Origin: Octopus bimaculoides
Taxonomy: Eukaryota
Assembly: GCF_001194135.2 (NCBI RefSeq)
Contig: NC_068988.1
Location: forward strand, 91,115,810-91,177,745
Direction: 5' to 3'
DNA length: 61,936 nucleotides
Below are positions 1,858-35,071 of this stretch, piece by piece. Numbering within the stretch: position 1 is the first letter of the stretch; every line of letters starts with the position of its first letter. A model generated the notes under the pieces. The model was not told where the DNA came from and made no database searches. It saw nothing but the letters and a program-made list of their open reading frames with translations. Position numbers and translations under genes: made by a program.

Positions 1858-1875
1858 TTGTATGTGTGCATGTGT

Positions 1876-1918
<43 letters not shown>

Positions 1919-1993
1919 CTGCACCCGTGTGCGTACGTAGTGCATCCATATATGGACGCATGTATCTACTAATCTACCGATGTTTCGATCTAT

Positions 1994-2027
<34 letters not shown>

Positions 2028-2050
2028 GTCTGTCTGTCTGNNNNNNNNNN

Positions 2051-2099
<49 letters not shown>

Positions 2100-2527
2100 A
2101 CATACATGCGCACACACTGTATGCCTTAATATAAATGGATTCGTGGATAGGTCGTCGTCATCGTCGTCATCATCATTTTCATTATCAGCATCGTAATTAG
2201 ATTGAGCAATAAGTACCAGAGAAATTCTCCACTGAATAGCAGTAATTATTATAAGCAAATGATCAGAACGAAATAAAGAGCGGTGACAGAAAGGAGAAAA
2301 ACGTTCTAGTTTTAGAATATGTATTCTGTAAATAAGTGCAGAAAGGAGACGAATGTTAAGATGCAGTTACATCAGATGCAAAAGAAAAAATAGCTATCAA
2401 TATCTACTATAGTCAATCGAAAGCTCGAGAGACATTGTTCAAGGGAGATAACTTCTTAATAAAGAGTCATTCGTTATCTTCCTTACATCACAGCTAATTT
2501 TTTTAGCGTGTGTGTATGCTAGTACAA

Positions 2528-9851: not shown

Positions 9852-10807
9852 ACCTATTTATCTATTTATATCCCTCCCGTCTCTCTCCAATCTATCTATT
9901 TGCACTCTTTGTGTGTGTGTGTGTAGGTGTATGTATATATACACACTCACACACACACATAATACATACATACATACATACATACATACATGGGAAGAAA
10001 CAGGGAGGCAGCGAAAGACAGGAAAAAAGAAAGAGAGAAAGGAGGTGAATAAACATTACGATTAACTACCGTCATTATTTTTATCACCATCAGTAAAAGA
10101 AGAAACAGCGACGATATCAACACCACTAAGAAAGAGGGGAGCGAGTCTGTGAAGGAAAACAATACCGAAGTCACTCGATTGTCTGAAAATAGCAGCTAAA
10201 TCTCCCTTAAATCATACATTCTAACATATTCTAACACAGTCTTTGATAGCTCTAAAAAAAAAAAGCGATAATTGTTTGAATGTCCTTGAGTATTGGTCGT
10301 TAGGATTGACGTGGGTAAAACATCAAATCAGAAAAGTTATACAACAAAACAATAAGAGAAAGAAAAGACCAACAACCTGAAGAGGCTAATGTTAAAACGA
10401 TGTCCTAGTGTACGCAGACAATATGACGGGCTGATATTACTTTACCCCTGTTGAAGTGTCAGGTAACATTTTCCCCATATTTTCCTACACATTATTTCAC
10501 AAATATTCAACACACACACACACATATAACACATACTCACGCACATAACACACACACACACACACACACTTGTTTGGATACGGTAAAGAAATTTAGTCTG
10601 TCTGATAAATACTCACATTTGGTTTTACAAACGGGAGCAAACCTAATACACCTGTTTTTATGTTCTCAGTTCAAATGCCGCCGGGGTCGACTTTGGTTTT
10701 CATCCTTTCAGGGTCGATAAATTAAGTACCAGTTGCGTACTGGGGTAGATTTAATCGACTGGCCCCTAACCCCAAAATTTCAGGCCTTGTGCCTAGAGTA
10801 GAAAAGA

Positions 10808-15996: not shown

Positions 15997-16249
15997 ACGC
16001 GCGTGTGCGGAATACAATTTTCCACCGCCCACGCTACCACCACCGCCAGCCCAACACCGACCCGCTCCACCATTAATATGAATTGTGTATCTTTTGTGTT
16101 TTTCAGTGTAATATGATGATTTTTTGTATCGAGAAGTGCTCCATTAATAGGTTGGCACCGGGATCTGATGCTAATCTCACCTCATTCTCTGTTGTACACT
16201 TGACCAAGCAACATCGCAGCAACATAGCATCATATTTGTAAAAGAAACT

Positions 16250-16940
16250 ATGAAGGAAGCTGCTGTATTGTTACATATTGTTACATTGATGGCAAGTGTG
16301 ATACATATCAACACTAGCAGCTTCATCGTCAACAACAGCGTCAACAAAAGAAATATGATCAGTAACCTAAACTCCAAATTTATAACCTTTAACAATACGG
16401 TGGATTTGATTATTAAAGCGGCGACCTGCCATCCGGTATTGAAACCATGTAGAAACGGTAGAAAGTGCCTTCGTGACAGTAACGATAGAATATACAAATG
16501 CCGTATGGACAACAGTAACAACACTGACGACAACAACAACAACAATGAGATGAATACGAGCGTCACCACCGTCAACTACAATACTAGCGACAGCAAGAAC
16601 ATTAACAACAGCAGTAGCAGCAGCAGCGATGCTATCGACGCTAGCATCATCAACCACAGCAACATCAGCATCACTAACAGCAACGAAAGCTACAGTGATA
16701 ACTTCAATAGTGCCATCATCAACAGCAGCAACAGTGACAGCAACAGCAGCAGCAGTGACAGTAACTACAACAACAGAAACTTCAACCCCCAAATTATACC
16801 CTTTAACAAAGCAGTGGACTTGATTATAAAAGCGGCGACCTGCCATCCGGTATTGAAACCGTGTAGAAACGGTAGAAAGTGCCTTCGTGACAGTAACGAT
16901 AGAATATACAAATGCCGTATGGACAACAATAACAACACTG

Positions 16941-16983
<43 letters not shown>

Positions 16984-17327
16984 CGGGACCTCTGAATCTC
17001 CAGTTGTTTCACCCAAGACCTGTACCATGAATTCGACTCATTGTGGAAGAGATGAAACGTGTGTAAAATACAACAGTAGTTTACAGTGCCGTAAGTTAAG
17101 TGGCGGAGAACAGTACATTTGTGATCTATGTGCCAATGGTTTATGTGTGTTCGAGAAGGACGGAGATATATCCTGTAGTTGCAAACCACAGTGGACAGGA
17201 GATCTATGCTCTGAGCCTTGCCACAGGAACTGTACAATTGGCAATTGTATTTTGTTACGATACGAAGAATATTGCGAGTGTCCAGGCAATTTTACGCCTT
17301 CTTCGAACTGCACAGAACAATACAACG
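16250..17327 (+). CDS. EGF-TM-TIR exon 1 (signal peptide, half-EGF repeats, N/S-rich stalk, 2 EGF domains)
   Basis: ATG at 16250; donor AACG|gtgagt at 17327/17328; EGF-like CDLCANGLCVFEKDGDISCSCKPQWTGDLC and CHRNCTIGNCILLRYEEYCECPGNFTPSSNC. Confidence 0.88.
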
Positions 17328-18574
17328 GTGAGTCATTTTTTCCCTCTTACAACGATTGTAAGATTATGATTGCATATATATATATATANNNNNNNNNNNN
17401 NNNNNNNNNNNNNNNNNNNNNNNNNNNNNNNNNNNNNNNNNNNNNNNNNNNNNNNNNNNNNNNNNNNNNNNNNNNNNNNNNNNNNNNNNNNNNNNNNNNN
17501 NNNNNNNNNNNNNNNNNNNNNNNNNNNNNNNNNNNNNNNNNNNNNNNNNNNNNNNNNNNNNNNNNNNNNNNNNNNNNNNNNNNNNNNNNNNNNNNNNNNN
17601 NNNNNNNNNNNNNNNNNNNNNNNNNNNNNNNNNNNNNNNNNNNNNNNNNNNNNNNNNNNNNNNNNNNNNNNNNNNNNNNNNNNNNNNNNNNNNNNNNNNN
17701 NNNNNNNNNNNNNNNNNNNNNNNNNNNNNNNNNNNNNNNNNNNNNNNNNNNNNNNNNNNNNNNNNNNNNNNNNNNNNNNNNNNNNNNNNNNNNNNNNNNN
17801 NNNNNNNNNNNNNNNNNNNNNNNNNNNNNNNNNNNNNNNNNNNNNNNNNNNNNNNNNNNNNNNNNNNNNNNNNNNNNNNNNNNNNNNNNNNNNNNNNNNN
17901 NNNNNNNNNNNNNNNNNNNNNNNNNNNNNNNNNNNNNNNNNNNNNNNNNNNNNNNNNNNNNNNNNNTGTGTGTGTGTGTGTGTTTGTGCGTGTGTTTGTG
18001 CGTATGTGTTTGAAAACCTTAGCTGTTAAGTCATATGGTATGTCAACTATCTCCCCTTCTCACATGGATCTGATCTCAGTTGCCATTTGATAATTGTGAC
18101 ACATCCTCCAGAGACAGATAATTTTACTAGATTAAGAATATATTTCGCTTTTGTATCTGATTTGCAAGATTCTTTATGTGAATTCGTGTGTTGAAACAAA
18201 TTTTATTGTGTCTAGAGGGAATCAGTATGCCAATATAAATAACACTGTTTCAATTCCACTCATTTGTTACCAGTTAGTTGGTTAAATAACCGATTGTTTT
18301 GCTATTGTTTGTTAAAGTTATTTCGTTGCTACTTGCAACCTTTTCAATGACAAACAAAAACAAAACAATCGGATATTTGACCAATTGACAAATGATAAAT
18401 GTGTGTGTTAATTATACTGGCATAATGACTCTCCCTAGACGCATCAAGAATTTATGCTACATGATATTTGATATACCTGTGTTTCTCTCTCTCTCCCCTT
18501 CTCCCTATCTCTCTCATTCCATCCATCTCTCTTTCTGTCCTATCTCTTTACATCTCCAATCTTTCTGTCCTCTC

Positions 18575-18618
<44 letters not shown>

Positions 18619-20201
18619 TCTTTTTCTGTCCTATTTCTTTATATGTCTTATATTTCTGTCTCATCTCTCTCTCTTTTCCTCTCTCTCTCTCTCCTCCTCT
18701 CCCTCTCTCTCTCTCTCTCTGCTCCTCTCTCTCTCTCTACTCCTCTCTCTCTCTCACTCTCTCTCTCTTTACATGTGTGTGCCTGTGTCTGCGCGTGTAT
18801 ATATCTATTCTTTTAGTCTTTTACCTGTTTCAGTCATTTGGCTGCGACCATGCTGGAGCACCACCTTAAAGGGCTTTAGTCGAAGAAATCGACCCCAGGA
18901 CTTACCCTTTGCAAGCTTAGTACTTATTCTATCGGTCTCTTTTGCTGAAACACTAAGTTACGGGGACGTAAAAACACATTACTTATTAGATATACTTCTA
19001 TTTGACCATTAACTTGTGTAAAAAAAAATATTTTTATATATTTTTTAATTTTTTTAATATCTAACGGTTTTTTTTCTTAGGTCTGAATTTTTTATTTACT
19101 TTCATAACTCCAACGGTCTTTTTTGAAATGTACAGTTATCGAACTTCACAGCATAACATCATTAATTTGCATCAATTATCATTTGCTTTGTCTTCTTACG
19201 GTTTCAAAACCGATGTGTTATACGGTTGCAATATGTCTCATGTCTTTTCAACTTGTTTATTTACATGTAATTATAGGTCAACTATGAATGTTGTCTATGA
19301 ATGTTGTCTATTTTTACGGTCTGCTTTGTATTAATACGACCCTGAGGAGATGCAATATCCCATATTTTATAATATGCATGAATCGATCTGGATATTGCAT
19401 CGAAATGATCATAGGTCATAATAAAGTCTTTACAATGGATCAGATTTTAGCTCTTATTTAAATCGATGGCGCCATGCAGTGGGACTGAATCTATAACCAT
19501 GTGGTTGAGAAGCAAACTCCTTACCACACAGGTGTAGAATGAGAGAGGAGAGTTTGCTTGAGGCTTTATTACAACAGCGTGAATTACTTAATCTTACACG
19601 TTTTTCCCTAGCAAACACAACAATTTTGTACGATAATCGTTACGTAAACGAATACATAATAGAGTTAAATGCATGACAGTTGCAGCCTACAGAGGAATAT
19701 ATTATATCGTATAATATATTATTGCATACCAAACTTGGTTGGCCGATAGAGCGAGGAAACAAATGTGTGTAAACTTAAGAGAAAATTATTTTTATACCAT
19801 TTAAGTAAAGGGGTAGGGTAGTAGTATTATGTTATCAGTGAAATTAAGAGAAAAAATGTCAAAGAGTAATAATGAAGCGCTATGTCTTAGAGCAAAAGAG
19901 GTTCAATTAAGGTCATAATTACAAAAACTTTCTACAGATGAATGGTTTAGAACGGAGTCATGGTGTGGACAGTATATTAGTTAGCAAAAGGCGGTCGGAT
20001 ATATACGCTGTTAAATTAGTCATGTACACTTGTACAAATTTTATCGCCACGATATTTTCTATATCCTTGTACACACATACAGGCACACACACAGGCACAC
20101 ACACAGATACACACACACACACACACACACATGTATATATACATGTGTGCGTGCACACGTGTGTAGGTAAATATTATATATACACATCTCTCTCTCTCGT
20201 A

Positions 20202-20249
<48 letters not shown>

Positions 20250-20391
20250 NNNNNNNNNNNNNNNNNNNNNNNNNNNNNNNNNNNNNNNNNNNNNNNNNNN
20301 NNNNNNNNNNNNNNNNNNNNNNNNNNNNNNNNNNNNNNNNNNNNNNNNNNNNNATATATATGTATGTATATATACATTCATATATGTATTC

Positions 20392-20424
<33 letters not shown>

Positions 20425-22021
20425 CAAGCAATGTTAAATCTCTGAACGAGGTATTAACAGTAACTGCACGATAAAGTGAAGTATATTTGCCACTTAAATG
20501 TGGCTGACCCCTAAGGGTGGATGTTACTGTTGCTTTTAGCCCCAAGAGAACATCTGCTCCAGCTGGCTATCGACACACATCTGTGTCCTGTCTATATTTG
20601 CAAAGGGAAGTTATCTTTCCCATCTTGATCTGCGATATATATGTATTTACATATGCATATTTATACGCATATACGCATGTATATACCTATATGTACTAGA
20701 TGAACGTTAACCCTGTTTTAAATATTAATGTTAATTAGTGTGTTTAATATTTTCCCTAACCTTTTCTTTCATTTGTGCGAGTTGTACTGCATAATTCATC
20801 AATTCTATGGTATTTCCTCGTCTGCTTTAACTATCTCATCTCTTTATATCTCTTTATATAACATGATATCAGCGAATTTTATTTAAGTTTTTCCCTATCT
20901 TTACGTTTGCCAGGACTCGCAGGATTCTAATTTTAACGTCAAGCACCTGTTCACATATTGGAATGTTTCATTTAATTTATTTTCGTACTATTTTTAATTT
21001 GTTCTCATATCTGTTTTTATGGACTTCTCCTCATCTTAATTATCCTTTTTTAATTTGTCTTTGTTAATGTCCTATCAGCTATTGAACTTGTTATTAAGGC
21101 GGCGAATTCGCACAATCCTTAGCACGCTGCGCTCAATTTTTACCGACATTTCGTCAGTCTTTACGTTCCGAGTCCAAATTTCGCCAGGTCCGCTTTGCCT
21201 CTCACACATTTCGGGGTCAATAAAATAAGTACCTCTTGAACACTGGGGTTGATATAACCGACTTAATCTCTCACCCGAAATTCCAGGCCTTGTGACAAAA
21301 TTTGAAAACATATTTATAATTATAATCTTCTTTATTTTTATATTTTATCACACAGTATGTGTGTGTGTGTGTGTGTATGTGTGTGTGTGTGTGTGTGTAC
21401 TGTGGCAGACTGGGTCTAAAAATATTGGTTGCCAGGAGACAAAGGATCCCACCCGCAACTACAATGCTATCGTTTAATTTTTTTAAAAATAATTTTCACT
21501 AATTACACTGTACATGTACTGTGCATATTACTGATAACGTACAGTGATACCAAATGTAAATACAGAATGTCATAATGGGGTTACTATATAAATATTTACG
21601 CGAAAGTATAGTATACTGTTATTTTTGAAGTATAGTGTTGTTTNNNNNNNNNNNNNNNNNNNNNNNNNNNNNNNNNNNNNNNNNNNNNNNNNNNNNNNNN
21701 NNNNNNNNNNNNNNNNNNNNNNNNNNNNNNNNNNNNNNNNNNNNNNNNNNNNNNNNNNNNNNNNNNNNNNNNNNNNNNNNNNNNNNNNNNNNNNNNNNNN
21801 NNNNNNNNNNNNNNNNNNNNNNNNNNNNNNNNNNNNNNNNNNNNNNNNNNNNNNNNNNNNNNNNNNNNNNNNNNNNNNNNNNNNNNNNNNNNNNNNNNNN
21901 NNNNNNNNNNNNNNNNNNNNNNNNNNNNNNNNNNNNNNNNNNNNNTCTCTCTCTCTTGCTTCTCTCTCTCTCTTGCTTCTCTCTCTCTTACTTCTCTCTC
22001 TCTCACTCTCTCTTTCTCTTG

Positions 22022-22056
<35 letters not shown>

Positions 22057-22058
22057 CT

Positions 22059-22093
<35 letters not shown>

Positions 22094-24118
22094 TACATAC
22101 ATGCAACCTACATAAATACATCAATTACAATTTTATTCAGGAGTGTACTCCTTTTCTCTGCCTTTCTATTAATTCTCTCGGGAATTGTTTGACCTTCTGC
22201 ATTGCTTAACTGCTTTATTTGTTTTGTTTGTTTTCTGTTTTCAATTTTTATTCTTTCTCAAGACTTCTCCGATGATAACTGGTTCTGTTCTATTCTTTTT
22301 TTGCTTATGGATATTCCCACATTTTGTAGACTTCTACTTTTATTTAAGCTTGTATCGAGATCTTTTTACTGCTTTACAATGTCCTAGTTTGAAGAAATTA
22401 TGACTTCTATAATGTGATATTCTCTTTTTTATATCATGTATTCAATTGCTGCTTGTTGGGCTATCAAAATTCCATATAATTTTTTAGTTTTCCAGGTTCA
22501 ATTTGAGCCTTTTCTGTTCTGCATCTGTGACATTTGTTTCAAGTATAGTATCTATGTTTTACAGAGTAACCAAACCGTATCATGATGAGGTGGGTTAAAA
22601 AGTAGTGTTAAAGGAAGAAGTCGTGGCAAATTATAAGGTGCAGTGAATATAATTTCAGAAAGATTTACCAGCAAATAACACGAAGATCGACATTAATATT
22701 ACGAATTTAAGGAAGCTTGGACAGTTTGAAATATTTGGACAAACTTTGAAATGCTTGGACTTATCTTGAGTTTGCACACAAGAAAAATATGGTTGTACCG
22801 TTGACATAGCTGTTCTGAGGACCGTACGTCAGTTTGTGAGCTCCGGCACACGACACTGTATCATGTGTCAGAGCTCTGTGAGACAGAGGTAGCATGCTCA
22901 TGTAGGAGTTTTACATCATATCCACTGAACGGCTACTGTAATACGGAAATCGTCGTATGCGAAGTAAAGGTAACAACAATCGGACCAAATGGGCAACTAA
23001 ACGTGCGAAAGTACGTGGGAACAACTGAAGGCCACTTCAGGATCCGCTATCACAACCACAAGTGATCCTTCAACATCTTGGAGAGACCTAACGTCATAAC
23101 CCTAGTCAAGCACGTATGGTTATTGAAATAAAGAGCTGCAGAGTACAGCATAAAGTGGAGGATTTTAGAGAAATGTAAATCATACTTTAATAGCAACGGG
23201 AAGTGCAGGTTATGCCTGGCTGAGAAAAGAGCGATATTAAGGAGCTCTCAGCATCCAGGAATCTACCTGAACAGCAGAAGTGAAATTTTAAATGCCTGCC
23301 CACATGAAAGGAAGTACATCCTATCATACCTGCGTGCCTCATTGTAGCTATAATCACCAGTCCCGCCAGCTTCAACTCTTCCCCCACCGATACCTGGGAA
23401 TCCGGCAGAGAGTTTGACTAGAACATACACAAACGCACTCGCAAACACACACGCACTCGCAAACACACATGCTGTAACACGGCGAACATCCACTCAATAG
23501 ACCCTTTTCCACCTCCCCCAATATAAGCCCCTACACTTATTGTACCCCTACACACATTCCATGCATACATAAATGCCCCAAAGAATTTAACCAAAACATA
23601 AAAGAAAAAAAACACACACACTAACGAGCACAGATGTGTATGCGGCCATTTCTACAAAAACACTAACCCTAAAACATACACACATTTCCCAAACACTCTT
23701 TTCCAGAAAACTGTTGTCGCTTTGCAGCAACTCCAGAAATGGTGTTTTGTTATCAAGGGACATAACACTTAACCAAACCATTGCTCGGTTCGTTTCCTCT
23801 TTTTCACATCAACCACAAACCGGATATGTCTATTCACCTCCAATAACAGAGACCAGTTGCCATATTTCATTCCATAACTGCCACCTCTGAAGCGGACAGG
23901 GTTATATAATCAGATTGTTACCTAACACTCCATTGAAACCCCTAGTGCGAAACCGATCGGTAAGATTGGCTGTAATGGATATATAAACTGTATACTTCGA
24001 ATAATATACCCACTCAACTGACAAGTATACGAGTGCATTGTTTCTGATTTATGGATTCCAAGACGGTATATGCATACGTATATAGTTATATATCTGTCGA
24101 TATGTTCGTGCATATGTA

Positions 24119-24171
<53 letters not shown>

Positions 24172-25195
24172 GTTAAAGTAAAGAGGAAAGGCAAAAAATT
24201 AGGCAAGGCATGACAAGTATATTTGATTTAAGTTAATCTAATTTTGCTACATAACGAACGGTAAAANNNNNNNNNNNNNNNNNNNNNNNNNNNNNNNNNN
24301 NNNNNNNNNNNNNNNNNNNNNNNNNNNNNNNNNNNNNNNNNNNNNNNNNNNNNNNNNNNNNNNNNNNNNNNNNNNNNNNNNNNNNNNNNNNNNNNNNNNN
24401 NNNNNNNNNNNNNNNNNNNNNNNNNNNNNNNNNNNNNNNNNNNNNNNNNNNNNNNNNNNNNNNNNNNNNNNNNNNNNNNNNNNNNNNNNNNNNNNNNNNN
24501 NNNNNNNNNNNNNNNNNNNNNNNNNNNNNNNNNNNNNNNNNNNNNNNNNNNNNNNNNNNNNNNNNNNNNNNNNNNNNNNNNNNNNNNNNNNNNNNNNNNN
24601 NNNNNNNNNNNNNNNNNNNNNNNNNNNNNNNNNNNNNNNNNNNNNNNNNNNNNNNNNNNNNNNNNNNNNNNNNNNNNNNNNNNNNNNNNNNNNNNNNNNN
24701 NNNNNNNNNNNNNNNNNNNNNNNNNNNNNNNNNNNNNNNNNNNNNNNNNNNNNNNNNNNNNNNNNNNNNNNNNNNNNNNNNNNNNNNNNNNNNNNNNNNN
24801 NNNNNNNNNNNNNNNNNNNNNNNNNNNNNNNNNNNNNNNNNNNNNNNNNNNNNNNNNNNNNNNNNNNNNNNNNNNNNNNNNNNNNNNNNNNNNNNNNNNN
24901 NNNNNNNNNNNNNNNNNNNNNNNNNNNNNNNNNNNNNNNNNNNNNNNNNNNNNNNNNNNNNNNNNNNNNNNNNNNNNNNNNNNNNNNNNNNNNNNNAAAA
25001 GAACCTATATATATGGAATGTATAAAGTTTCGAGCATTGCTCTTCGTTAGAAAGAGGAGAGAGATGTCCAGAGAGAACAAAAAAAAAAAGTCTAAGAAAA
25101 GCGCGTGTGTGGTTATATGGCTGAAGTGACCGGAAGAGGAGAGAGATAGAGATAGTGCTTGTTTAAGGCAGGACAATGCGAAACTACCAGTGTGT

Positions 25196-25231
<36 letters not shown>

Positions 25232-28200
25232 CTGTGTGCGTGCGTGGTAGTATCTGTGTGCGCGTGTGTTTGTGCTTATGCGTATTTTGTTTATTTTCTG
25301 TCTTGTTTCTCTTTTGTTATTTGTATCTTCAACCTTTTATAAGAGCTAATTTGTAACTGTAATTCATATTTCAAAAAATGTTTGATGATGTGGTTATGAA
25401 ACACGATATAATTCTTGTTATATGAATATAATTGAAATTATAGTATCACATAAAAATTATTGAAATAATTGTAGAAATGAATATTTTGAAATATCACTGA
25501 TATTGTTTCCTGTTATTCTTTCTTACATATGCTTGTATATTCATTTGTGTATACAGAAAAAAAAAAAACGAACGACAGAGTAAGAAAGAGAGATGCCAGT
25601 GTGTATGTGTATTTAACGTATACATGTATGCATATAATACACATCCTGGCTTTCTTTGTATCTAACCCCACTGATTGGTGTGTGTGACAGAGAGTGATTC
25701 CATTTATGGTGTATGAACGAGTACTTTTACTCACCCATAACTCTCTATATTTATTCTTTCATTTCTGTTTCCTTATTTACTTCTTGGAATCTACACTGAC
25801 TTAGGTGTGTGAAAGCATAATAACACATAGTACTTTATGCTACCTAAAGTATACTATCTTTTCCTATCGCTCTTTAAATTTCCTACATTGACCACAAACT
25901 AAACTGATACTTACTAACATAATGTCAACATCTATCACTCCAAATATGTGCACACTTCACCAGTGAACATCTTTCAACTACATTGAAACGCATTGAGTAC
26001 ATTTTTGACTGACTGATACCTTAGATCTTTGACTTCGAATGCCTAAAATGTGATATGTGTATGCGTACATGCAGATTGTTACCCGAGCCTTCTATGATGT
26101 ATCGCATCATATGAAGGTTTCTGTAAATGAATCTGTTGGGAACCGCACACATTTTTGATTGACCAACCAACAAGTAACAACCACTTTGCTAACACCTTAC
26201 CCATTTAGAGGGATTATGGGCTGGAAATTATTTAGATTATCTCCTTTGTTGTTGTTTATTTTTCTTTCACCAGAGTTAACACAACAAGGTTCACAGAATT
26301 GAGAATTCTTCCGTTCCTTTGCCAGTAGTCATAGACCTTCATCAGGGTCGATGAACAAGTCTGGCATAAAACCATAAAACTCATAGAGTAGACCATCCAA
26401 GCCGGGCGATTTGAACCTTACACAACCACTCAAAACCTACTTGTTATTAGCTTTTCGCAGTGCCCGTCGAGAGCCGCGGTAGACCGCCAAGGTAGACACT
26501 AAGGTTCATAACCGCCTCCGACTTATCGCTTACTCCAAACAGTTGAGCCAAGTGCTGCACATATCTGCAACGCCGCACATATCTGCCTGGAACCGAGTAA
26601 CACGCGTGCATCTTGTTCAGTTAAAGACCGAATTGTGGCTGTGTTGCAACGAACGCCCTGCCTCCGCCACTTGTGTCCATCGAACCACTTTCATTCCCTT
26701 TTGTTTTAACGTAGAAGCTCAAGCCCAGACAACGCAGACTTGGTGTTTCGCGTTGGTTGTGATCCCTTTTCTATTCGCCTCTTCTACCTTGCTACCTACT
26801 TACTCCTCTAATCTATTTCTCTCTATCACTAGTTCTTAACCAAACTTTATCCAGTGTCTGTTATTAGCTACTATCTCCGTCAACTGCAACTTGATTAGAT
26901 CGCTAATTCTATCTCTGTAATCCTTTTGCTTCGGGAAAACTAGTTCAACTGTCAGTAGCAATAACCCTGTCTATCAGTTCGATCGCAGTCAACTGCACAG
27001 GTGTCAAATTTGCGTGCTGTGTAGCCTAGTAGTTTAAATGTAGACACTATATACCATCTATATTAGCTAGCCTAACGAATACGCAATTTATATATGATCT
27101 GGATGAGTATTGTGGTTGCTCTACATTCACAACGAATTACAGTCAATACTTGTCAGACATCGTGCGTCAAGAATATAATTCCAATCGTCCTCTGGTACTA
27201 AGGAGTTTAATGAAACTCCGTTATCCTGTCCCGGTAGGTGCATAGGCAACCATTAATCTGAAGGCACTGCCTTTACTGTCCTGAATGATAGTACCGACGA
27301 CTTAACTCCTTGATCCAGGAAGATCAAATGTACAGTCAAAGCCATTCTTTTCCGGTAAGTCTGCGCTGTCTGGGCTTGAGCTTCTACGTTAAAACAAAAG
27401 GGAATGAAAGTGGTTCGATGGGCACAAGTGGTAGAGGCAGGGCGTTGCTGCAACACAGCCGCAGTTCGGTCTTTAACCGAACAAGATGCACGTGTGGTAC
27501 TCGGTTCCGGTAACCGCCCGATCCCGTTAGACCACAAGATCTGTATCTTATAGTTGTCAAAAATGGGGATGAATGCATGTGTTCCAGAGTTTCTGGTTCC
27601 ATTAATGGTTTCCACATCTATATTTAGTGATCAGAATTCGCCGAGCAAGTTATTTGACTTTCAAGCTGACCCCAAAGCACGTACATTTGCACATCCTTCT
27701 CTGCGTGAAAACGGGAGAGGTTACTCAACTTCGTCATCGAGAATGGCGGGTCATTTGCATCCTTTTCCAGAAGGTGGATGTTTCTTAAAAAGTCCTTGTA
27801 ATACTATTTTTCTGAAACTCGCAACACTTCCTGAGATATTGTCCAAAGAGTATGGTAATTGGCATTTGACGTTTTCGTTAATTATGATATATTTTTCTAA
27901 TTAACTATACGTTTCACATCACATTAAAAAGTATATAATGTTATTGTAACCATAGCTTAAAATGACATCTTTGTTATAGTTTCTCTTACACAGCACCAAC
28001 AATGATTCATTTCACAAATGTTCGCGAGCACTTCGGGAATTTATGGACACAAAACATGTCCGTTGAATAACATCAAAACGTACTAAACCTGTTCAGTGAT
28101 ATCTTAAATCATTCAAATTAAATGCAAATAATATTACATATAGGCAATTAATTAGCACTAATTTGAAGCGAAAAGTTGAAACGAGCCCATGAATCAGGCC

Positions 28201-31200
28201 AACAGTTTGTATATAGCTCTTGTATGGTAGCCATATTACAGATTTACTGCCAAGTACCTTCTTCTCTAATTAAATATGATTTGTTTCTGGTATTTTAAGT
28301 GTACTATTGCATTGTATAAAATAGTGAGGGGGGGGGGGGGGTGACAGACAGACACTATTTATTTGATTTTTGACTGATACCTGACCTGATTGTAAATAAG
28401 TAACACAACTACGTAGGCTGGATACATTACAGTTAAATGTATTATCATTGGTTTGGTACATTGTAAGGTGGCATCAAAAGGTTCTCGAACTAGTTATACT
28501 TGATAAAAAAAATAACTTATTTACCTAAGTTTTAACATCATCTACTTCCAAATAGTCACCTTGCGCAGCAGTACACCTGTCCCAGCGTTCCTGCCACTTT
28601 GGAATCCATCCTGGAAGTAATTTTCCGTAAGTGAGTCGAGGACCTTCTGCGATTCGGTCAGGAACTCGAAAACGGTGTTAAAGTGGCGATCTTTGAGCTG
28701 CCTTTTTATCATGGGGAAGTGATGCAAGTTTACAGGTGCTAAAGCTGGTGAATAGGATGGGTGCGGAAACAATACCATCTTGTTGAGAAACTCGCGAGTG
28801 AAGCGGACCTCGGTGACAGGGTGTTTTGTCACCGTGAAGAATTCAGTTCTTCGCGCTCCACTGATTCGGTTACTTTCGCAATAGAACTATCGACTGACAG
28901 TCAGGTCCTGGAGAATAAATTCTCGGTGAACAATACTGCGGAGGTCAAAAAAAAAAGAAAGAAAACGATGAGAATGCCCTTGATTGAACTGTGGCTCTGT
29001 CATGCCATCTTGGGTCGTGGAGATGAAGGGCGCTTCCATTGTGACGACTGCTGCTTCATCTCAGGATCGAACTCGTAGACCCAACTCTCGTCACTGGTGA
29101 TGATCCTCGACATGAAGGATGGGTCATCAGCTGGAAGAGATCTTGAAATACTTCGACGCGGTGTTCTTTCTGCTCAGTTGTCGGCAGACGGGGGACAGAC
29201 TCAGCAGAAACACGCTGCATGTTCAATTTAAACGTTGGGATTGCCTGCACGGAACCATATGACAGGCTAACAACATCAGCAATGTCGTTGATTGTCCTCC
29301 GACGATTCCCATGCACAATCTGATGAATTTTCTCCACATTTCCGTGAGGTGATGCTCGCGTCAGGTCTTTCAGATCGTTCGTTGTCTTTCAGGGACGTTC
29401 TTCCGCTTTTGAAGCGCCTGTTCCACTCGAAACATTGCGTACGACCCATTGCCCCGACGCCGTAAGCATACCGAAGCATGCTCAGTTCACCTTGGTTCTT
29501 TGTTCCAACTTCCTGTCCATAACAAAATCGCTGACTACACTATACACGCGATGACAAAAACACAAATTTCACAACTTGCGAAGGAAACACAGCAATGTCA
29601 ATTGGCACGCTGTTTCATGAAGGTCACTGTTAGCTCTCACTGCGCAACCGTGTACTGCCATCTGTTGGCGCGCTACAAAACTAGCCTGGGAACTTTTTGA
29701 TATCACCTTGTATTATACCTACATACAGCTAGGTGGATTAAACAGGTCATGCACACAATACAGTAAACTGTTAACAGCTTAGTGCATTGAGCTGTTTATA
29801 TTTAAATATGCGTTCGATTATTTTAAATAGAAGTAACACCATCTGTTCTTAATTACAGACGGTCCTGATGGAAACCAGAAGAAATTATTCCCAGTAGATA
29901 TTATTTTAGCTGCCATAGCAGTTACTGTGATTGTCTTAATTTCACTCGTATTGTACCTGATGTGGAAGAGACGCTTTCGATTCTTTATGAAGTTTGCATA
30001 CTATTTTCAGCCTTACGTAGATAAAGGTAAGTTTCATATGTAATAACTGAAAGTTAACATTTAACCAATGGAGTGTTGCATTATAACTTCGATTGTGTGT
30101 CAGTGTGTCATGTATATTATCGGGAAACAACTGGATATTTAGAACATTGTTTTGTAGCTGTTGCTAGTGTATGTCCCCAAGAGATCCATGAAACAAGGAG
30201 GTCAATGGTGCGTAGATAGTGAGTCGAATGAAAATCTATAACTTTGTAGTTTGTTGTAACGGGATTCGATTCCAGGATAGACTGTCTTTAGTCATGATAT
30301 CCTTAATTTAGGTTTTGTGCACTAATGCATTTTAATCTAGTTAGACACTGATTTGATCCTTCTGACATATAAAGAAGAATCATATATGATAGTGTTACAG
30401 TCAAGTCACTCTATTGCCTATTCTAATTCAGTTGCTTTCGTTAGTGTTCACAGCAGAAGTAGTGAAAGCGAATGCAGTCCGAATCTGATAGCTGCTTCTC
30501 GGCTTTACAAATTATTGGTACTCTGTATGCCACTACTGTATTTGAGGCTAATTTTGCTGATTATTTTGCTGATTATTGCATTACTGTGTTTGCTTCATCT
30601 TTTTTGTTTTTTAATCAAGTAGGGTTCTCTCAGTATACTGTTATAGTAGATTTCTGGTGTGTTGTATTTTGTAGAGGTGTGGATGCTTGCAGGGATAGGG
30701 GCGGCAAGATTGGGCTTTGCTGCAATATTTTTTCAGAATTTTTTTTTTCTTTTTGTTGACAGTCTAAGGAATGGATCTCTGCACAAACTGTGATTTTTGC
30801 CAAGTGCACTGTTTTGAATTCTTCTTGGTTTATTACAAAGTGACTGGATCTGTAGAAAGACTGGATAACTTATGATGCCTTAAATGTGCTGTTTAAGGAT
30901 TAATGTAGTTTTTTTTTTTTCAGTGAAAGGAATATATAAGTTTGTGATATGAAAAATGAGTCATTCTAAAATGTTTGAATGTCCGTGTGTGTTAGGTGGG
31001 TGATATTTCTGTATGAAGATACTTTGCTTAAGTTTCATTAGACTATTATAAATTTTGTTAGACTATTATGAATTCTAGGTAGTTGGCATATAATTGCAGA
31101 TATTGGTGAGTGCAGTAATGATATTTTGGGTGTATGTTTGTGATTTTGTTAGGAAATTAAATATTTTGAGAATAGGGATTGCTTTTCTGATGTGTGATAT

Positions 31201-32034
31201 AAAGAAATAGGTCAGAGTCCTGGCTGGGTGGATATTTAAGAGTGAACTGTGATCAAGCAACTCCATAACACACACAGTCGAACGAACGATCCAGTATGAT
31301 ATATTACTTTAAGTTGTTGTTGTAGAATAGGATTGTGAGTGCAACACTCTAATCACTGGGTCATCCCTCAAACACACACACATATATATGTGTGTGTATA
31401 TANNNNNNNNNNNNNNNNNNNNNNNNNNNNNNNNNNNNNNNNNNNNNNNNNNNNNNNNNNNNNNNNNNNNNNNNNNNNNNNNNNNNNNNNNNNNNNNNNN
31501 NNNNNNNNNNNNNNNNNNNNNNNNNNNNNNNNNNNNNNNNNNNNNNNNNNNNNNNNNNNNNNNNNNNNNNNNNNNNNNNNNNNNNNNNNNNNNNNNNNNN
31601 NNNNNNNNNNNNNNNNNNNNNNNNNNNNNNNNNNNNNNNNNNNNNNNNNNNNNNNNNNNNNNNNNNNNNNNNNNNNNNNNNNNNNNNNNNNNNNNNNNNN
31701 NNNNNNNNNNNNNNNNNNNNNNNNNNNNNNNNNNNNNNNNNNNNNNNNNNNNNNNNNNNNNNNNNNNNNNNNNNNNNNNNNNNNNNNNNNNNNNNNNNNN
31801 NNNNNNNNNNNNNNNNNNNNNNNNNNNNNNNNNNNNNNNNNNNNNNNNNNNNNNNNNNNNNNNNNNNNNNNNNNNNNNNNNNNNNNNNNNNNNNNNNNNN
31901 NNNNNNNNNNNNNNNNNNNNNNNNNNNNNNNNNNNNNNNNNNNNNNNNNNNNNNNNNNNNNNNNNNNNNNNNNNNNNNNNNNNNNNNNNNNNNNNNNNNN
32001 NNNNNNNNCATATATACATACACACGTACTACTG

Positions 32035-32113
<79 letters not shown>

Positions 32114-32330
32114 TTTTAAAAAAATTCAGACAAATACATAACAAAAACACCAGGACTTACAAATATATATAACATACAGAAAATTGCACTACTGGGTACT
32201 GCACACATTCTACGCAAAACACTTTCAATACAGTAAACATAAGAGCACCACAGCAAACCACAGCACATACCCAAGGCGCACAGAGCTGCGCTCGGTAGTG
32301 AAGTGAAAGCACGTTATAAAAATAAAACTA

Positions 32331-32370
<40 letters not shown>

Positions 32371-33635
32371 GTTTTCCATTTTCAGAGGAGAAGTTATACG
32401 ACGTATTTATTTCGTATAAATCTTCAGATACAGACGAAAATTGGGTGAAAAATATTTTGTTTCCGAAAATCGAAGATGACATGGGATTGAAAGCATGTAT
32501 TCACTTTCGGGACTTCATCCCGGGTGAGAGTAAGTATCAACTAGTATGAGTGGAATATACCAGTTCAGAGATGTGTACACACACTCACACACACACGCAC
32601 ACGCACACGCACACACACATATACATGGTCAAGGTACATTTGAATAGAATCTTCCATGCTGATAAGTTCCAAAGAAGACCGTAACATGTACATAGCTGTC
32701 CTTTTGCTAAGAAACAAAGGGAAAACTTTTCAGTAAACCTGTATAGTCTTCATGTAGAGTCATACAAAGGCAATCTGACTGGTTGTTTGAGCATCGAATA
32801 AATTTTCTTACGGCATCTGTTTCGACTTCCTGCGCTTTGAGTACAAATCTCGCGTTGGTTAACTTCGCTTTTAATTATTTCGGGATCGATAAAGAAAGTA
32901 TTAAACCGGGCCTGTGAAGTGATGGAAATGTAAGAACCTTAGATCAGATATTTTATGGTATTCGTTCTGGCTTTTAACGTTGTGAGTTCGAACCCCGAAT
33001 TATGATAAACATAATCCATAGCCGATTTTAATAACACAGCCTGACACTTTCGGTGTTTTTAGCAGAGTTCCCGTATTACAAACATTCGAGTCAGGACTCT
33101 TGTTCGAGGATACCGTCCCCCCCCCCACACACACCCCAAGACCTAAGATGTTCTTTAATGGTCGTCGTACTACCTTACCTCTTGACCAAACGGTAAAAAA
33201 GATTAAATAAATAAAAGATTTATTAATTTTCGGAGCTTGATTCTTAATTTCGTAAAGTTACCTCCCTTCCTCCCCTTTCTCAAAGAATCGCTAACGATTA
33301 ATCAGTTATTGCTAAATATGTTAAACTAGCTTATTCTAAATAAGATGCTTCGCTAAATACTGGTGAATGCAACATAACTAGCTGCACAGTATCTCGCGCA
33401 CAAAGTACAGAATCAGGATAGGTCGAAACGATCGTTGTATTGAATAAATATTCTTGCAAACTCCATTCTCCGTTTCCCCCATTCATTATAAGCTCAACGA
33501 ACAGCGCGGAATTCCTGAGGTAAGTCCAATGACATTTACATCAAAAGCTCAGGTAGCTTAAACGGTGAAAGTGCTTTAATCGGCATACTACTAACCATAT
33601 ACTCAAGGTTGAAATAATTATTAATATCTATCTAC

Positions 33636-33693
<58 letters not shown>

Positions 33694-34542
33694 NNNNNNN
33701 NNNNNNNNNNNNNNNNNNNNNNNNNNNNNNNNNNNNNNNNNNNNNNNNNNNNNNNNNNNNNNNNNNNNNNNNNNNNNNNNNNNNNNNNNNNNNNNNNNNN
33801 NNNNNNNNNNNNNNNNNNNNNNNNNNNNNNNNNNNNNNNNNNNNNNNNNNNNNNNNNNNNNNNNNNNNNNNNNNNNNNNNNNNNNNNNNNNNNNNNNNNN
33901 NNNNNNNNNNNNNNNNNNNNNNNNNNNNNNNNNNNNNNNNNNNNNNNNNNNNNNNNNNNNNNNNNNNNNNNNNNNNNNNAAATAGATCACATCTTGTGTC
34001 TATTAAGACCTAAATTGTTCTCAACATGAAATATAGCAGCTGTTGAGAACAATTTAGGTCTTAATAGACACAAGATGTGATCTATTTCTAGCGCATTAAT
34101 TGTCCACGTTAGTGGTCGACGTTATTTTTTAAAATGTATCTATATTATATATATATATATATATATGAGTGAAATTGTTTTTAATCAGTAATTTTCTTGT
34201 ATATTTACAGCTATTTCAAACAATATCATAGAAAGCATACAAAATAGCAGAAGAACGCTTTTAGTGCTAACCAATGATTATATAGAGAGCGAGTGGACCC
34301 GGATGGAGTACCAAGTAGCCCAACAGGAAATGTTAAAACTTCGTCACAGAATTATTCCCGTTATTCTGGGTAATTTTAAGGATTTAGACATCAAAGACAA
34401 AAATCTAAAATTTATTTTGGAAACAGTGACCTACCTACAATGGCCACCAGACTCAGAGAGTATTCATCTTCAAAATGCATTCTGGAACAATCTGAAGAAG
34501 ACTTTACGAAATAAATACCAGTCGAAGCAAGTTTCTACATAA
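16250..34542 (+). CDS. EGF-TM-TIR single-pass receptor, 4 exons (16250-17327, 29859-30026, 32386-32529, 34211-34542), 573 aa
   Basis: Exon lengths 1078+168+144+332=1722 nt, open frame, all three introns GT-AG and phase 1. N-terminal hydrophobic signal MKEAAVLLHIVTLMASVIHI, EGF Cys patterns, 22-aa TM followed by KRR, TIR box1 YDVFISY, box2/BB loop CIHFRDFIPG, SEWTRMEY, box3 FW. Extra exons hidden in intron-1 gaps cannot be excluded. Confidence 0.88.
19338..19417 (+). ncRNA. Type I minimal hammerhead ribozyme (intact core)
   Basis: GACC-CUGAGGA-[gatgcaatatcc / ggatattgcatc, 12 bp]-GAAA-palindrome (A)UGAUCA(U)-UA cleavage site-GGUC. Confidence 0.8.
22880..23990 (+). mobile_element. Penelope-like element 3' part (GIY-YIG endonuclease remnant plus terminal repeat region)
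   Basis: CSCR..YPLNGYCNTE.VV..., KYVGTTEGHFRIRYHNHK, LVKHVWLLK, YSIKWRILEKCKSY...KCRLCLAEK..I, LNSRSEILNACPH; decayed hammerhead downstream. Confidence 0.85.
23880..23970 (+). ncRNA. Decayed minimal hammerhead ribozyme of the Penelope element
   Basis: gccacct-CUGAAG(c)...ccctagtgc-GAAA-palindrome (A)CCGAUCGG(U)-A-agattggc; A9 mutated, stems I and II imperfect. Confidence 0.6.
25950..27720 (-). mobile_element. L1/Tx1-clade LINE ORF2 remnant (APE, linker, RT N-terminus)
   Basis: APE pieces GCANVRAL..IDVETI.GTR, LIFLDQ, AFRLMVAYAPTG; RT pieces KSPGLDGLLYEFY, KGDNLNNFQPI, CAVPNRFIYRNLHMMRYII; many frameshifts. Ends approximate. Confidence 0.75.
28464..29710 (-). mobile_element. Mariner DNA transposon, near full-length, decayed (in TIR-receptor intron 1)
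   Basis: About 30-bp TIRs taaggtggcatcaaaaggttctcgaactag / ctagcctgggaactttttgatatcaccttg|ta; ATG at 29520 MDRKLEQR, GRTQCFEW.RRFKSGRTSL.D.ERS.RP, YSPALAP..FP.IK..LK.RHF. Confidence 0.9.
29859..30026 (+). CDS. EGF-TM-TIR exon 2 (transmembrane helix)
   Basis: ttacag|AC...AAAG|gtaag; reads DGPDGNQKKLFPVDIILAAIAVTVIVLISLVLYLMWKRRFRFFMKFAYYFQPYVDK; 168 nt, phase 1-1. Not in the ORF track. Confidence 0.88.
32386..32529 (+). CDS. EGF-TM-TIR exon 3 (TIR N-half)
   Basis: ttttcag|AG...GAGA|gtaagt; EEKLYDVFISYKSSDTDENWVKNILFPKIEDDMGLKACIHFRDFIPGE; 144 nt. Confidence 0.92.
33980..34087. repeat. Perfect 47-bp inverted repeat, 14-nt loop, abutting an N-gap
   Basis: 33980-34026 is the exact reverse complement of 34041-34087. 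Confidence 0.9.
34211..34542 (+). CDS. EGF-TM-TIR exon 4 (TIR C-half, stop)
   Basis: ttacag|CT; ISNNIIESIQNSRRTLLVLTNDYIESEWTRMEYQVAQQEML...LQWP...AFWNNLKKTL...VST*. Confidence 0.92.
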
Positions 34543-34579
34543 TTTTATATTTATACATGTCTATGAGATATTATCTCTG

Positions 34580-35071
34580 TCGTGCCTTCTTCGGGCGTGG
34601 AGATCAAGGGTTCTTCCATTGTGACGACTGATACTTCGTCTCAGAATTGTACCCTGAATTTTCTCCACATTTCCAAGGAGGACGCTCGTGGCAGGCCTTC
34701 CAGATTGCTCATCGTCTTTCAGAATCATTCTTCCGTTTTTGAAGCCCCTGTTCTACTCGAAACATTGCGTACGACCCATTGCTTCGTCTTGAAGGATGCT
34801 CAATGTCTCTGTAGCAGACTTCCCATCTTTTAAAATCAAAATTTCACGCTGGCTCTTTGTTCCAACTTTCTGTCCATTACAAAATCGGAAACTACGGCAT
34901 ACACGTGATGACAATAACACAAATTTCACAAATTGCGAAGTAAACACAGCAGTGTCACTCGGCACACTGCTACGTGAATGTCAGTGCTAGCCCTCACTGC
35001 CCACGCAACCGGATGCTACCGTCTGTTGGCGCGTTACAGAACTAGTCCGGGAACTTTTTGATGCCACCTTG
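34580..35071 (-). mobile_element. 5' fragment of the same mariner family, just downstream of the TIR-receptor stop
   Basis: TIR actagtccgggaactttttgatgccaccttg|ta; GKSATETLSIL..EAMGRTQCFE; aligns to the right half of 28464-29710. Confidence 0.85.

What the first reader, a model, noticed from the sequence alone, without database searches (positions are those of the whole stretch)
16250..34542. LRR-less Toll-type receptor: EGF ectodomain, TM and TLR-like TIR across four phase-1-joined exons
Seen: exons 12.5, 2.4 and 1.7 kb apart splice in frame into a 573-aa protein; the ORF track shows only disconnected pieces and misses the TM exon. Known: TLRs use LRRs and IL-1R family members use Ig domains, and the BB-loop Pro (RDFIPG, intact here) is needed for MyD88-type adaptor binding. 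Inference: a signalling-competent receptor that couples an EGF-type ligand or adhesion cue to TIR/NF-kB signalling. I recall EGF+TIR architectures being catalogued in bivalve genome surveys but know of no ligand or function, nor of a cephalopod description. Strong candidate for an undescribed system here.
Basis: partly seen in the sequence, partly recalled or inferred. Interest (0 to 1): 0.82.

Follow-up and report, generated by a model that had tools for sequence, protein, structure and literature searches.

The report
Octopus EGF–TIR receptor gene, alternatively spliced
This is a real, transcribed Octopus bimaculoides gene for a membrane protein with EGF-like modules outside the cell and a Toll-like-receptor-type TIR signalling domain inside; it belongs to an already catalogued but functionally unstudied mollusc family, and a conserved splice variant drops its membrane anchor.

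Summary
The four coding exons (16250-17327, 29859-30026, 32386-32529, 34211-34542, + strand) have GT-AG borders, are all phase 1 and give 573 aa. RNA contigs from six public runs join them at exactly those sites. All six assembly gaps lie in introns, and exon 1 is spliced directly to exon 2 or 3, so no LRR exon is hidden.

Additions:
- A 5' UTR exon lies at about 10092-10462.
- The last exon runs to about 35688.
- A second isoform skips the 168-nt transmembrane (TM) exon in frame (517 aa). It appears in four of six runs and is also annotated in O. sinensis.

The TIR is closest to human TLR2/1/6/10 TIRs (E 2e-22), with boxes 1-3 and the BB-loop proline intact. The ectodomain is EGF-like by cysteine pattern, homology and a predicted fold that matches Notch EGF arrays; Pfam scores are below threshold.

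The architecture is right, but it is not an undescribed system. The same EGF-TM-TIR layout occurs in 25 or more mollusc species, including O. sinensis and Argonauta, and 'EGF-TIR' is listed in oyster and Aplysia immune-gene surveys. Function is untested anywhere. I rate it a new member of a known kind, of moderate interest, mainly for the TM-exon splice switch.

The parts
10092..10462 (+). Non-coding 5' exon (5' UTR); donor CAG|gtaaca at 10462/10463
   Evidence: RNA contigs of X3, X11 and X13 cover 10092/10109/10126-10462 and continue with TGTAATATGATG..., which is 16107 onward
16107..17327 (+). Exon with the start codon (CDS 16250-17327, aa 1-359 plus the first base of codon 360). It encodes the signal peptide, two copies of a 4-Cys module, an Asn/Ser-rich glycosylated linker, one 4-Cys module and two 6-Cys EGF-like modules
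   Evidence: Acceptor ttttcag|TG at 16106/16107. In-frame TAA at 16109. Transcribed throughout. 20 N-X-S/T sequons and 24 Cys. AF2 plus Foldseek point to Notch EGF arrays
16374..16545 (+). Copy 1 of the internal 172-nt duplication (module FNNTVDLIIKAATCHPVLKPCRNGRKCLRDSNDRIYKCRMD)
   Evidence: Self-BLAST of exon 1: 94% identity to copy 2. Both copies are also present in O. sinensis P0001
16789..16959 (+). Copy 2 of the internal duplication
   Evidence: The X3 contig 16415-16858 spans from copy 1 into copy 2
17021..17311 (+). Membrane-proximal Cys-rich region, aa 258-354: a 4-Cys module plus two EGF-like modules (CANGLC...CSC...C and CHRNC...CEC...C)
   Evidence: 11 Cys/Gly columns are invariant across 28 family members. 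pLDDT is 84-93. Top Foldseek hits are Notch EGF11-13, probability 0.99-1.0. Pfam EGF_Teneurin E=0.017 and EGF_2 E=0.11, both below cutoff
29859..30026 (+). TM exon (168 nt, phase 1-1, cassette). TM helix I374-W395 = 29900-29965, followed by the basic stop-transfer KRRFRFFMK and the conserved YYFQPY juxtamembrane motif
   Evidence: Hydropathy maximum at 369-395. Included in contigs of X3, X11 and X13; skipped in X1, X11, X18 and X19
32386..32529 (+). First TIR exon: box 1 (YDVFISY) and box 2 / BB loop RDFIPGE (32508-32528, Pro461)
   Evidence: Pfam TIR 79.6 bits over aa 420-569. Alignment to the human TLR2 TIR shows identical RDFIPG
34211..35688 (+). Last exon: second half of the TIR with box 3 (F554-W555), stop codon at 34540-34542, then about 1.15 kb of 3' UTR containing repeat-derived sequence
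   Evidence: X3 contig covers 34211-35688 and X11 contig 34211-35590. Junction 32529/34211 seen in seven runs

Best explanation
This is a five-exon, roughly 25.6-kb gene of Octopus bimaculoides (chromosome CM046608.1, about 91.126-91.152 Mb). It encodes a type I membrane protein of the molluscan EGF-TM-TIR family. Shown: it is transcribed and spliced as proposed. Its ectodomain is Cys-rich and EGF-like, with 20 N-glycosylation sequons. It has one TM helix followed by a positive-inside cluster. Its cytoplasmic TIR is of the TLR1/2/6/10 type, with boxes 1-3 and the BB-loop proline. Inferred: binding of a ligand, or cell contact, at the EGF modules dimerises or clusters the protein. That would juxtapose the TIR domains and recruit a TIR adaptor (MyD88, which together with IRAK and TRAF6 is expressed in Octopus haemocytes), leading to NF-kB-type output. 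Shown: skipping of the symmetrical 168-nt TM exon gives an in-frame 517-aa isoform without a membrane anchor. This isoform is frequent in O. bimaculoides RNA and is also annotated in O. sinensis. Inferred: that isoform enters the secretory pathway and acts as a soluble decoy or antagonist, so the splice choice sets how much signalling-capable receptor is made.
For: Gene model and splice sites. RNA junctions. TIR: Pfam E 3e-22. Best solved relatives are TLR2 (2e-22), TLR15, TLR1, TLR6 and TLR10, well ahead of IL-1RAcP (2e-13), SIGIRR (3e-12) and MyD88 (1e-4). EGF nature: invariant Cys/Gly columns in 28 homologs, significant EGF_2/EGF_Teneurin hits in homologs, and an AF2 model (pLDDT 84-93 over the EGF pair) whose top PDB matches are all EGF arrays. 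Topology: hydrophobic N-terminus, all sequons and 24 of 25 Cys N-terminal to the TM, and KRR after the TM. Family conservation from EGF pair to TIR in cephalopods, gastropods and bivalves. Same four-coding-exon layout in the O. sinensis paralog. TM-less isoform: X1, X11, X18 and X19 and O. sinensis P0001. MyD88, IRAK and TRAF6 transcripts in Octopus haemocytes: PMC4199593.
Against: No functional datum exists for any member of the family; none turned up in the five literature searches made. Pfam EGF scores for this protein itself are below the curated cutoffs. The signal peptide, the topology and the fate of the TM-less isoform are inferred from sequence only. Three relatives (P0002, P0003, P0005) have Val instead of the BB-loop Pro, so that residue is not universally constrained in the family. 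Contig depth is a poor measure of isoform ratios, and the tissues of the runs are unknown.
Confidence: 0.55

Rival explanations
1. It is the signalling chain of a two-chain receptor, as in Hydra, where an LRR-less TM-TIR protein (HyTRR) works with a separate recognition chain. The EGF modules would mediate association with a partner that binds the ligand, rather than binding a ligand themselves.
For: There is no recognisable pattern-recognition domain, and the ectodomain is short apart from low-complexity sequence. The Hydra Toll-receptor-related 2 TIR is a clear relative (4w8g, E 2e-13). Cephalopods have the smallest TLR repertoires among molluscs (PMC10279657). The Hydra partnership itself is from my own knowledge (Bosch et al. 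2009), not read here.
Against: No partner has been identified. The two membrane-proximal EGF modules are conserved, but the distal ectodomains vary widely in length (360-1250 aa proteins), which fits diversified direct ligand binding as well.
Confidence: 0.15
2. It is a negative regulator or decoy of Toll signalling, like SIGIRR/TIR8. Its TIR would sequester adaptors or TLR TIRs without activating them, and the TM-less isoform and the TIR-less neighbouring paralog would add further decoys.
For: The SIGIRR TIR is a detectable relative (E 3e-12). The locus produces an anchor-less isoform. A paralog isoform lacks half the TIR (P0029), and the adjacent EGF-only paralog is P0008. This pattern is typical of regulated or decoy receptor families.
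Against: The TIR is much closer to activating TLR1/2/6/10 TIRs (E about 1e-22) than to SIGIRR. Boxes 1-3 and the BB-loop proline are intact.
Confidence: 0.12
3. It is a developmental, neuronal or adhesion receptor rather than an immune one, comparable in logic to Toll-6/7 or IL1RAPL1. Teneurin/Notch-like EGF modules would mediate cell-cell recognition and the TIR would signal locally.
For: The best Pfam and fold matches of the ectodomain and of its homologs are teneurin-, Notch- and Delta/Jagged-type EGF modules. The gene is expressed in the RNA runs sampled, for which nothing on tissue or condition is on record.
Against: EGF modules are generic, so the similarity says nothing about the ligand. 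The tissues of the runs are unknown.
Confidence: 0.1
4. The TIR acts as an NAD+-consuming enzyme (SARM1-, plant- or bacterial-type) rather than as a scaffold, so that clustering triggers NAD+ depletion or production of a signalling nucleotide.
For: TIR NADases appear among the weak PDB matches (RUN1, RPV1, AbTIR, Cat1; E 1e-5 to 5e-4).
Against: These matches are 17-19 orders of magnitude weaker than those to scaffold-type TLR TIRs. From my own knowledge, the vertebrate TLR TIRs that were tested showed no NADase activity.
Confidence: 0.04

Closest known systems
Molluscan 'EGF-TIR' proteins, listed in the Crassostrea gigas immune-gene survey (PMC4346834) and the Aplysia californica immunome (PMC9334734: LOC101855416, LOC101856027), and RefSeq models such as O. 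sinensis P0001/P0014, Argonauta hians P0005, Patella vulgata P0007 and Lottia gigantea P0015
   Same: The order is the same: signal peptide, EGF-like modules, TM, conserved juxtamembrane segment, TIR. Identity is 37-63% over the EGF pair to the C-terminus, and the Cys framework is invariant. An octopus paralog has the same four-coding-exon layout.
   Different: This gene and its O. sinensis ortholog carry an extra N-terminal region: two copies of a 4-Cys helix-hairpin module and an Asn/Ser-rich linker, absent from the other members retrieved. They also have a TM-exon-skipping isoform. The oyster and Aplysia entries themselves were not retrieved, so orthology to them is inferred from heterobranch and bivalve relatives.
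Toll-like receptors of the TLR1/2/6/10 group (TIR domain)
   Same: The TIR matches at E 2e-22 over its full length, with RDFIPG identical to human TLR2 and boxes 1-3 present. Both are type I TM proteins.
   Different: There is no LRR ectodomain. The TIR is split by an intron just after the BB loop.
Hydra Toll-receptor-related proteins (HyTRR; PDB 4w8g)
   Same: Both are LRR-less TM proteins with a Toll-type TIR (E 2e-13).
   Different: From my own knowledge, HyTRR has almost no ectodomain and relies on a separate HyLRR chain. This protein has a structured EGF ectodomain.
IL-1 receptor family / SIGIRR
   Same: Both use a non-LRR ectodomain, a TM helix and a TIR. Soluble or decoy isoforms are a theme in the IL-1R family.
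   Different: Those receptors have Ig rather than EGF ectodomains. TIR similarity is ten orders of magnitude weaker than to TLR2.

Membership tests
Molluscan EGF-TM-TIR ('EGF-TIR') family | C-terminal TIR domain | tested here: met
   Pfam PF01582 79.6 bits (cutoff 21.3) over aa 420-569, and PF13676 62.9 bits
Molluscan EGF-TM-TIR ('EGF-TIR') family | EGF-like module(s) N-terminal to the TIR | tested here: met
   Pfam scores on this protein are below cutoff (EGF_Teneurin 15.6 bits against 24.3; EGF_2 13.3 against 22.1). However, the 6-Cys patterns align with invariant columns to homologs that have significant EGF hits. The AF2 model matches Notch EGF arrays at probability 0.99-1.0
Molluscan EGF-TM-TIR ('EGF-TIR') family | Single TM helix between the EGF modules and the TIR, with an N-terminal signal peptide (type I topology) | tested here: met
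   Kyte-Doolittle maximum of 3.0 at aa 369-395, followed by KRR. The N-terminus is hydrophobic, and all 20 sequons are on the N-terminal side. No dedicated signal-peptide or TM predictor was available
Molluscan EGF-TM-TIR ('EGF-TIR') family | Full-length homology to other members (EGF pair through TIR in one alignment) | tested here: met
   E from 1e-57 down to 1e-159 with 83-100% query coverage for octopod, limpet and Logan members. The profile search recovers 25 or more named mollusc proteins. About 50 of the top 150 50%-identity representatives match from the EGF pair to the TIR end in one stretch
Molluscan EGF-TM-TIR ('EGF-TIR') family | Orthology to the specific oyster and Aplysia genes named in the surveys | not tested
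   Those sequences were not returned by the searches. Heterobranch (Elysia, Plakobranchus) and many bivalve members were
Toll-like receptor (TLR) family | Extracellular leucine-rich repeats | tested here: not met
   No LRR hit in Pfam at E<=1. RNA joins exon 1 directly to the TM or TIR exons. Family members carry only EGF and TIR domains
Toll-like receptor (TLR) family | TLR-type TIR with boxes 1-3 and the BB-loop proline | tested here: met
   TLR2 TIR E 2e-22. YDVFISY, RDFIPGE and FW are present
IL-1 receptor family | Extracellular immunoglobulin domains | tested here: not met
   No Ig hit. The predicted fold matches EGF arrays only
MyD88-dependent signalling receptor (functional class) | Binds MyD88 or another TIR adaptor and activates NF-kB | not testable with these tools
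   Only the sequence prerequisites (an intact BB loop) and the presence of MyD88, IRAK and TRAF6 transcripts in Octopus (PMC4199593) could be checked

The most novel reading that the evidence does not exclude
A conserved splice switch on a symmetrical TM cassette exon toggles this Toll-type receptor between a membrane-anchored signalling form and a secreted form that still carries a complete TIR domain. If the soluble form is made and exported, it would be a physiological regulator (decoy) of an LRR-independent Toll-type pathway in cephalopods, whose TLR repertoire is the smallest among molluscs. To my knowledge (not searched here) it would also be the first animal TIR domain placed outside the cytosol.
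Probability: 0.2. Interest if true: 0.65.

Novelty: new member of a known kind. Interest (0 to 1): 0.4.

Why it matters
EGF-TIR proteins have been counted in mollusc immune-gene surveys, but none has a ligand, partner or phenotype. This locus gives an RNA-verified gene model in a laboratory cephalopod. No O. bimaculoides protein model with this TIR was returned by the protein searches. The locus also shows that the family's modular phase-1 exon structure is used to make anchor-less forms, and TIR-truncated forms in a paralog. That makes a concrete question testable: do non-LRR Toll-type receptors signal through MyD88, and is their output tuned by decoy isoforms and TIR-less paralogs?

Tried and rejected
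Each exon was then laid separately.
- The spliced 573-aa protein could not be given to the look-up of encoding contigs or structure prediction because it is not contiguous in the window. I therefore folded only the exon-1 ectodomain (aa 180-359) and relied on sequence for the TIR.
- The O. sinensis ortholog locus could not be fetched, because isoform X2 is not the recorded product. A gap-free check of intron 1 was therefore replaced by the RNA evidence and by the paralog locus L002.
- Hidden LRR exons are rejected on the RNA joins.
- A tandem paralog inside the window is rejected, because tblastn finds only one copy. The paralog P0008 lies just outside the window.
- A deuterostome member is rejected. 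The Ptychodera flava hit is an Ig-EGF-HYR-TM-TIR mosaic, not the same architecture.
- The alternative C-terminal exon of O. vulgaris at 36031-36258 has no RNA depth in four runs.
- Literature searches for 'ecTIR-DC' or 'TIR-DC' together with EGF, and for a cephalopod description, found nothing specific.


Full report

Yes. Joining 16250-17327, 29859-30026, 32386-32529 and 34211-34542 on the + strand gives a 1722-nt open frame of 573 codons plus TAA. The splice sites are canonical (CAACG|gtgagt ... ttacag|ACGG; AAAG|gtaagt ... tttcag|AGGA; GAGA|gtaagt ... tttacag|CTAT), and all three junctions are phase 1.

The scan program asked for the gaps to be tested first. All six runs of N in the range lie inside introns: four in intron 1, one in intron 2 and one in intron 3. 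The closest begins 61 nt after the exon-1 donor. The frame therefore never crosses a gap.

**2. RNA evidence**

The sequence occurs in several public RNA runs of one organism. Laying their contigs on each exon gave the following.
- Exon 2 is covered exactly from 29858/9 to 30026. It is flanked on one side by the last 28 nt of exon 1 and on the other by the first 30 nt of exon 3 (X3, X11).
- Exon 3 is covered exactly from 32385/6 to 32529 and is followed by the start of exon 4 in seven runs.
- One 1838-nt contig (X3) and one 756-nt contig (X13) each link exons 1, 2, 3 and 4.
- No contig shows any additional exon between exon 1 and the TM or TIR exons.

Exon 1 is transcribed from 16107 to 17327. 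It is preceded by a non-coding exon at about 10092-10462 (donor CAG|gtaaca, acceptor ttttcag|TG), seen in three runs. An in-frame TAA at 16109 makes the ATG at 16250 the start. The last exon continues to about 35688 as 3' UTR. The gene thus has five exons over about 25.6 kb.

**3. A second isoform**

In runs X1, X11, X18 and X19, contigs join 17327 directly to 32386 and skip the 168-nt TM exon. In X3, X11 and X13 the TM exon is included. The exon is symmetrical (phase 1-1), so skipping keeps the frame and gives 517 aa (...TEQYN-EEKLYDVF...). The RefSeq 'isoform X2' of the O. sinensis ortholog (P0001, 538 aa) has exactly this join (...TEQYK-EEKLYDVF...), so the event is conserved between species. 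In the three runs of study P1 it is the only form assembled. Contig depth is not a reliable measure of abundance, and the tissues are unknown to me.

**4. What the protein is**

*TIR domain.* Pfam finds a TIR domain at aa 420-569 (79.6 bits, E 3e-22) and nothing else above threshold. Against solved structures the TIR is closest to human TLR2 (E 2e-22), then TLR15, TLR1, TLR6 and TLR10. It is far closer to these than to IL-1RAcP (2e-13), Hydra TRR-2 (2e-13), SIGIRR (3e-12) or MyD88 (about 1e-4). The BB loop RDFIPG is identical to that of TLR2. Box 1 (YDVFISY) and box 3 (F554-W555) are present in the sequence.

*Topology.*
- The strongest hydrophobic segment is aa 369-395 (core I374-W395), followed by KRRFRFFMK.
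- The N-terminus (MKEAAVLLHIVTLMASVI) is signal-peptide-like.
- All 20 N-X-S/T sequons and 24 of the 25 cysteines lie N-terminal to the TM.
- This fits a type I topology with a cytoplasmic TIR. It is inferred from sequence; no dedicated predictor was available.

*Ectodomain.* On this protein Pfam gives only sub-threshold EGF hits (EGF_Teneurin E 0.017, EGF_2 E 0.11). Three further results support an EGF-like nature.
- The two membrane-proximal modules have the classical 6-Cys spacing.
- Their Cys and Gly columns are invariant in alignments of 6 and 28 family members. Several of those members score significantly for EGF_2, EGF_Teneurin and EGF_TEN.
- An AlphaFold2 model of aa 180-359 has a mean pLDDT of 74.7, rising to 84-93 over the EGF pair. 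It finds only EGF arrays in the PDB, led by Notch-1 EGF11-13 (E 3e-4, probability 0.99-1.0).

*N-terminal half.* This part is peculiar to this gene and its O. sinensis ortholog. It holds two copies of a helix plus 4-Cys hairpin module. The two 172-nt copies are 94% identical at the DNA level. They are separated by a 160-residue stretch that is 31% Asn and 17% Ser and full of sequons, and they are followed by an Asn run.

**5. Organism and context**

Locus L001, fetched for the paralog P0008 from O. bimaculoides GCA_001194135.2 chromosome CM046608.1, overlaps window 1-6066 at 100% identity. The window is therefore O. bimaculoides, and window position w equals record position 91115809 + w.

P0008 is a 207-aa protein that is 82% identical to this ectodomain but has no TIR. 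It starts about 3.9 kb to the left of the window on the opposite strand, head-to-head with this gene. O. sinensis has the same short form (P0010).

No O. bimaculoides protein containing this TIR was returned by either protein search. The gene therefore appears not to be modelled, or only partly modelled, in that annotation.

**6. Relatives**

- The single-sequence search found the O. sinensis ortholog (63% identity, 100% coverage), an O. vulgaris fragment, Argonauta hians, Patella vulgata and transcript-derived proteins. All have EGF-TM-TIR.
- A profile of six members recovered named proteins from Lottia, Haliotis, Biomphalaria, Mizuhopecten, Pecten, Ylistrum, Mercenaria, Mactra, Mya, Dreissena, Mytilus and Ruditapes.
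- An exhaustive HMMER scan of 1.84 billion representatives gave 586 hits at E<=1e-30. About 50 of the best 150 match in one stretch from the EGF pair to the end of the TIR.
- The representatives I looked up are all molluscs (Argopecten, Haliotis, Lottia, Mercenaria, Patella, Lymnaea, Babylonia, Sinanodonta, Elysia, Plakobranchus). The one exception is a Ptychodera flava protein that turned out to be an Ig-EGF-HYR-TM-TIR mosaic, so it has a different architecture.
- The O. sinensis paralog LOC115215177 (P0014) has the same layout of four coding exons. Its isoform P0029 skips the first TIR exon.

**7. Literature**

'EGF-TIR' is a named category in the oyster immune-gene survey (PMC4346834) and in the Aplysia immunome, which lists two genes and states that function is unknown (PMC9334734). 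I found no functional study and no cephalopod-specific description. Cephalopods have the smallest TLR repertoires among molluscs (PMC10279657). MyD88, IRAK and TRAF6 transcripts are present in O. vulgaris haemocytes (PMC4199593).

**8. Mechanism**

The best-supported reading is a type I receptor whose EGF ectodomain senses a ligand or contact. Its clustered TLR-type TIR domains would then recruit a TIR adaptor. Alternative skipping of the TM exon would produce a soluble, non-signalling form.

What is shown: the gene structure, transcription, both isoforms, the domain identities and the conservation.

What is inferred: topology, ligand-induced dimerisation, MyD88/NF-kB coupling, and the secretion and decoy role of the short isoform.

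The rivals are set out in the Rival explanations section, each with its refuting result:
- the signalling chain of a two-chain receptor, as in Hydra;
- a SIGIRR-like negative regulator;
- a developmental or neuronal adhesion receptor;
- an NADase TIR.

**9. Verdict**

This is a new, apparently unannotated member of a catalogued, pan-molluscan EGF-TM-TIR family, and it fails the defining LRR criterion of TLRs. The most interesting new element is the conserved TM-exon splice switch. Interest 0.4.

Noticed in passing
about 3.9 kb left of window position 1, opposite strand (L001 10001-12746; CM046608.1 about 91.109-91.112 Mb): A head-to-head paralog, P0008, annotated 'abnormal pharyngeal pumping eat-20', 207 aa. 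It has the same signal peptide and EGF region (82% identity), then a short hydrophobic C-terminal exon and no TIR. O. sinensis has the same short form (P0010). It may be a TIR-less decoy or a GPI-type relative.
   Followed up: partly
window 56952-57905 (-): An intact 317-aa single-exon ORF with several hydrophobic segments and a weak hit to 7tm_7 chemosensory receptors (E 8e-4, 19.2 bits, below the 26.6 cutoff). It may be a gustatory-receptor-like gene.
   Followed up: partly
window 2796-3793 (+): Two adjacent ORFs with a Tc5 transposase HTH (E 3e-5) and a DDE_1 endonuclease domain (E 2e-19): a pogo/Tigger-type transposon remnant between the two paralogs.
   Followed up: partly
window 27554-29479 (intron 1), also 11194-11571 (-) and 13125-13472 (-): Several 90-125-aa ORFs with no Pfam match that look repeat-derived. 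A 24-aa piece (27701-27772) is 75% identical to an internal segment of the paralog model P0009, which suggests an exonised repeat in that annotation.
   Followed up: no
window 34780-35060 and 35967-36004 (3' UTR and downstream): Short segments with RNA contig depth 10 to 100 times that of the rest of the exon, and many contigs that diverge at their edges. These are dispersed repeats expressed from many other loci.
   Followed up: no
window 36031-36258 (+): The alternative C-terminus of the O. vulgaris model P0004 maps here at 72% identity. It would need a donor inside exon 4 after ...IPVIL (CTG|GGTAAT at about 34368). No RNA depth was seen here in four O. bimaculoides runs.
   Followed up: partly
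L002 (O. sinensis CM016866.1) 10001-34947: The paralog LOC115215177 has the same exon layout (ectodomain, TM, TIR-a, TIR-b). Its annotated isoform ('protein draper isoform X2', P0029) skips the first TIR exon, so cassette use of the phase-1 exons recurs in the family.
   Followed up: partly
P0135 (Ptychodera flava XP_070565311.1): A hemichordate Ig-EGF-HYR-TM-TIR protein whose TIR and flanking region match the family profile at E 4e-50. This is another non-LRR mosaic Toll-type receptor, with a different architecture.
   Followed up: partly
window 16236, 16261, 16447, 17050, 32447, 34593, 35001, 35109, 35353: Single-base differences, and one 4-nt insertion in the 3' UTR, between RNA contigs and the assembly. 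They look like ordinary polymorphism between individuals.
   Followed up: no
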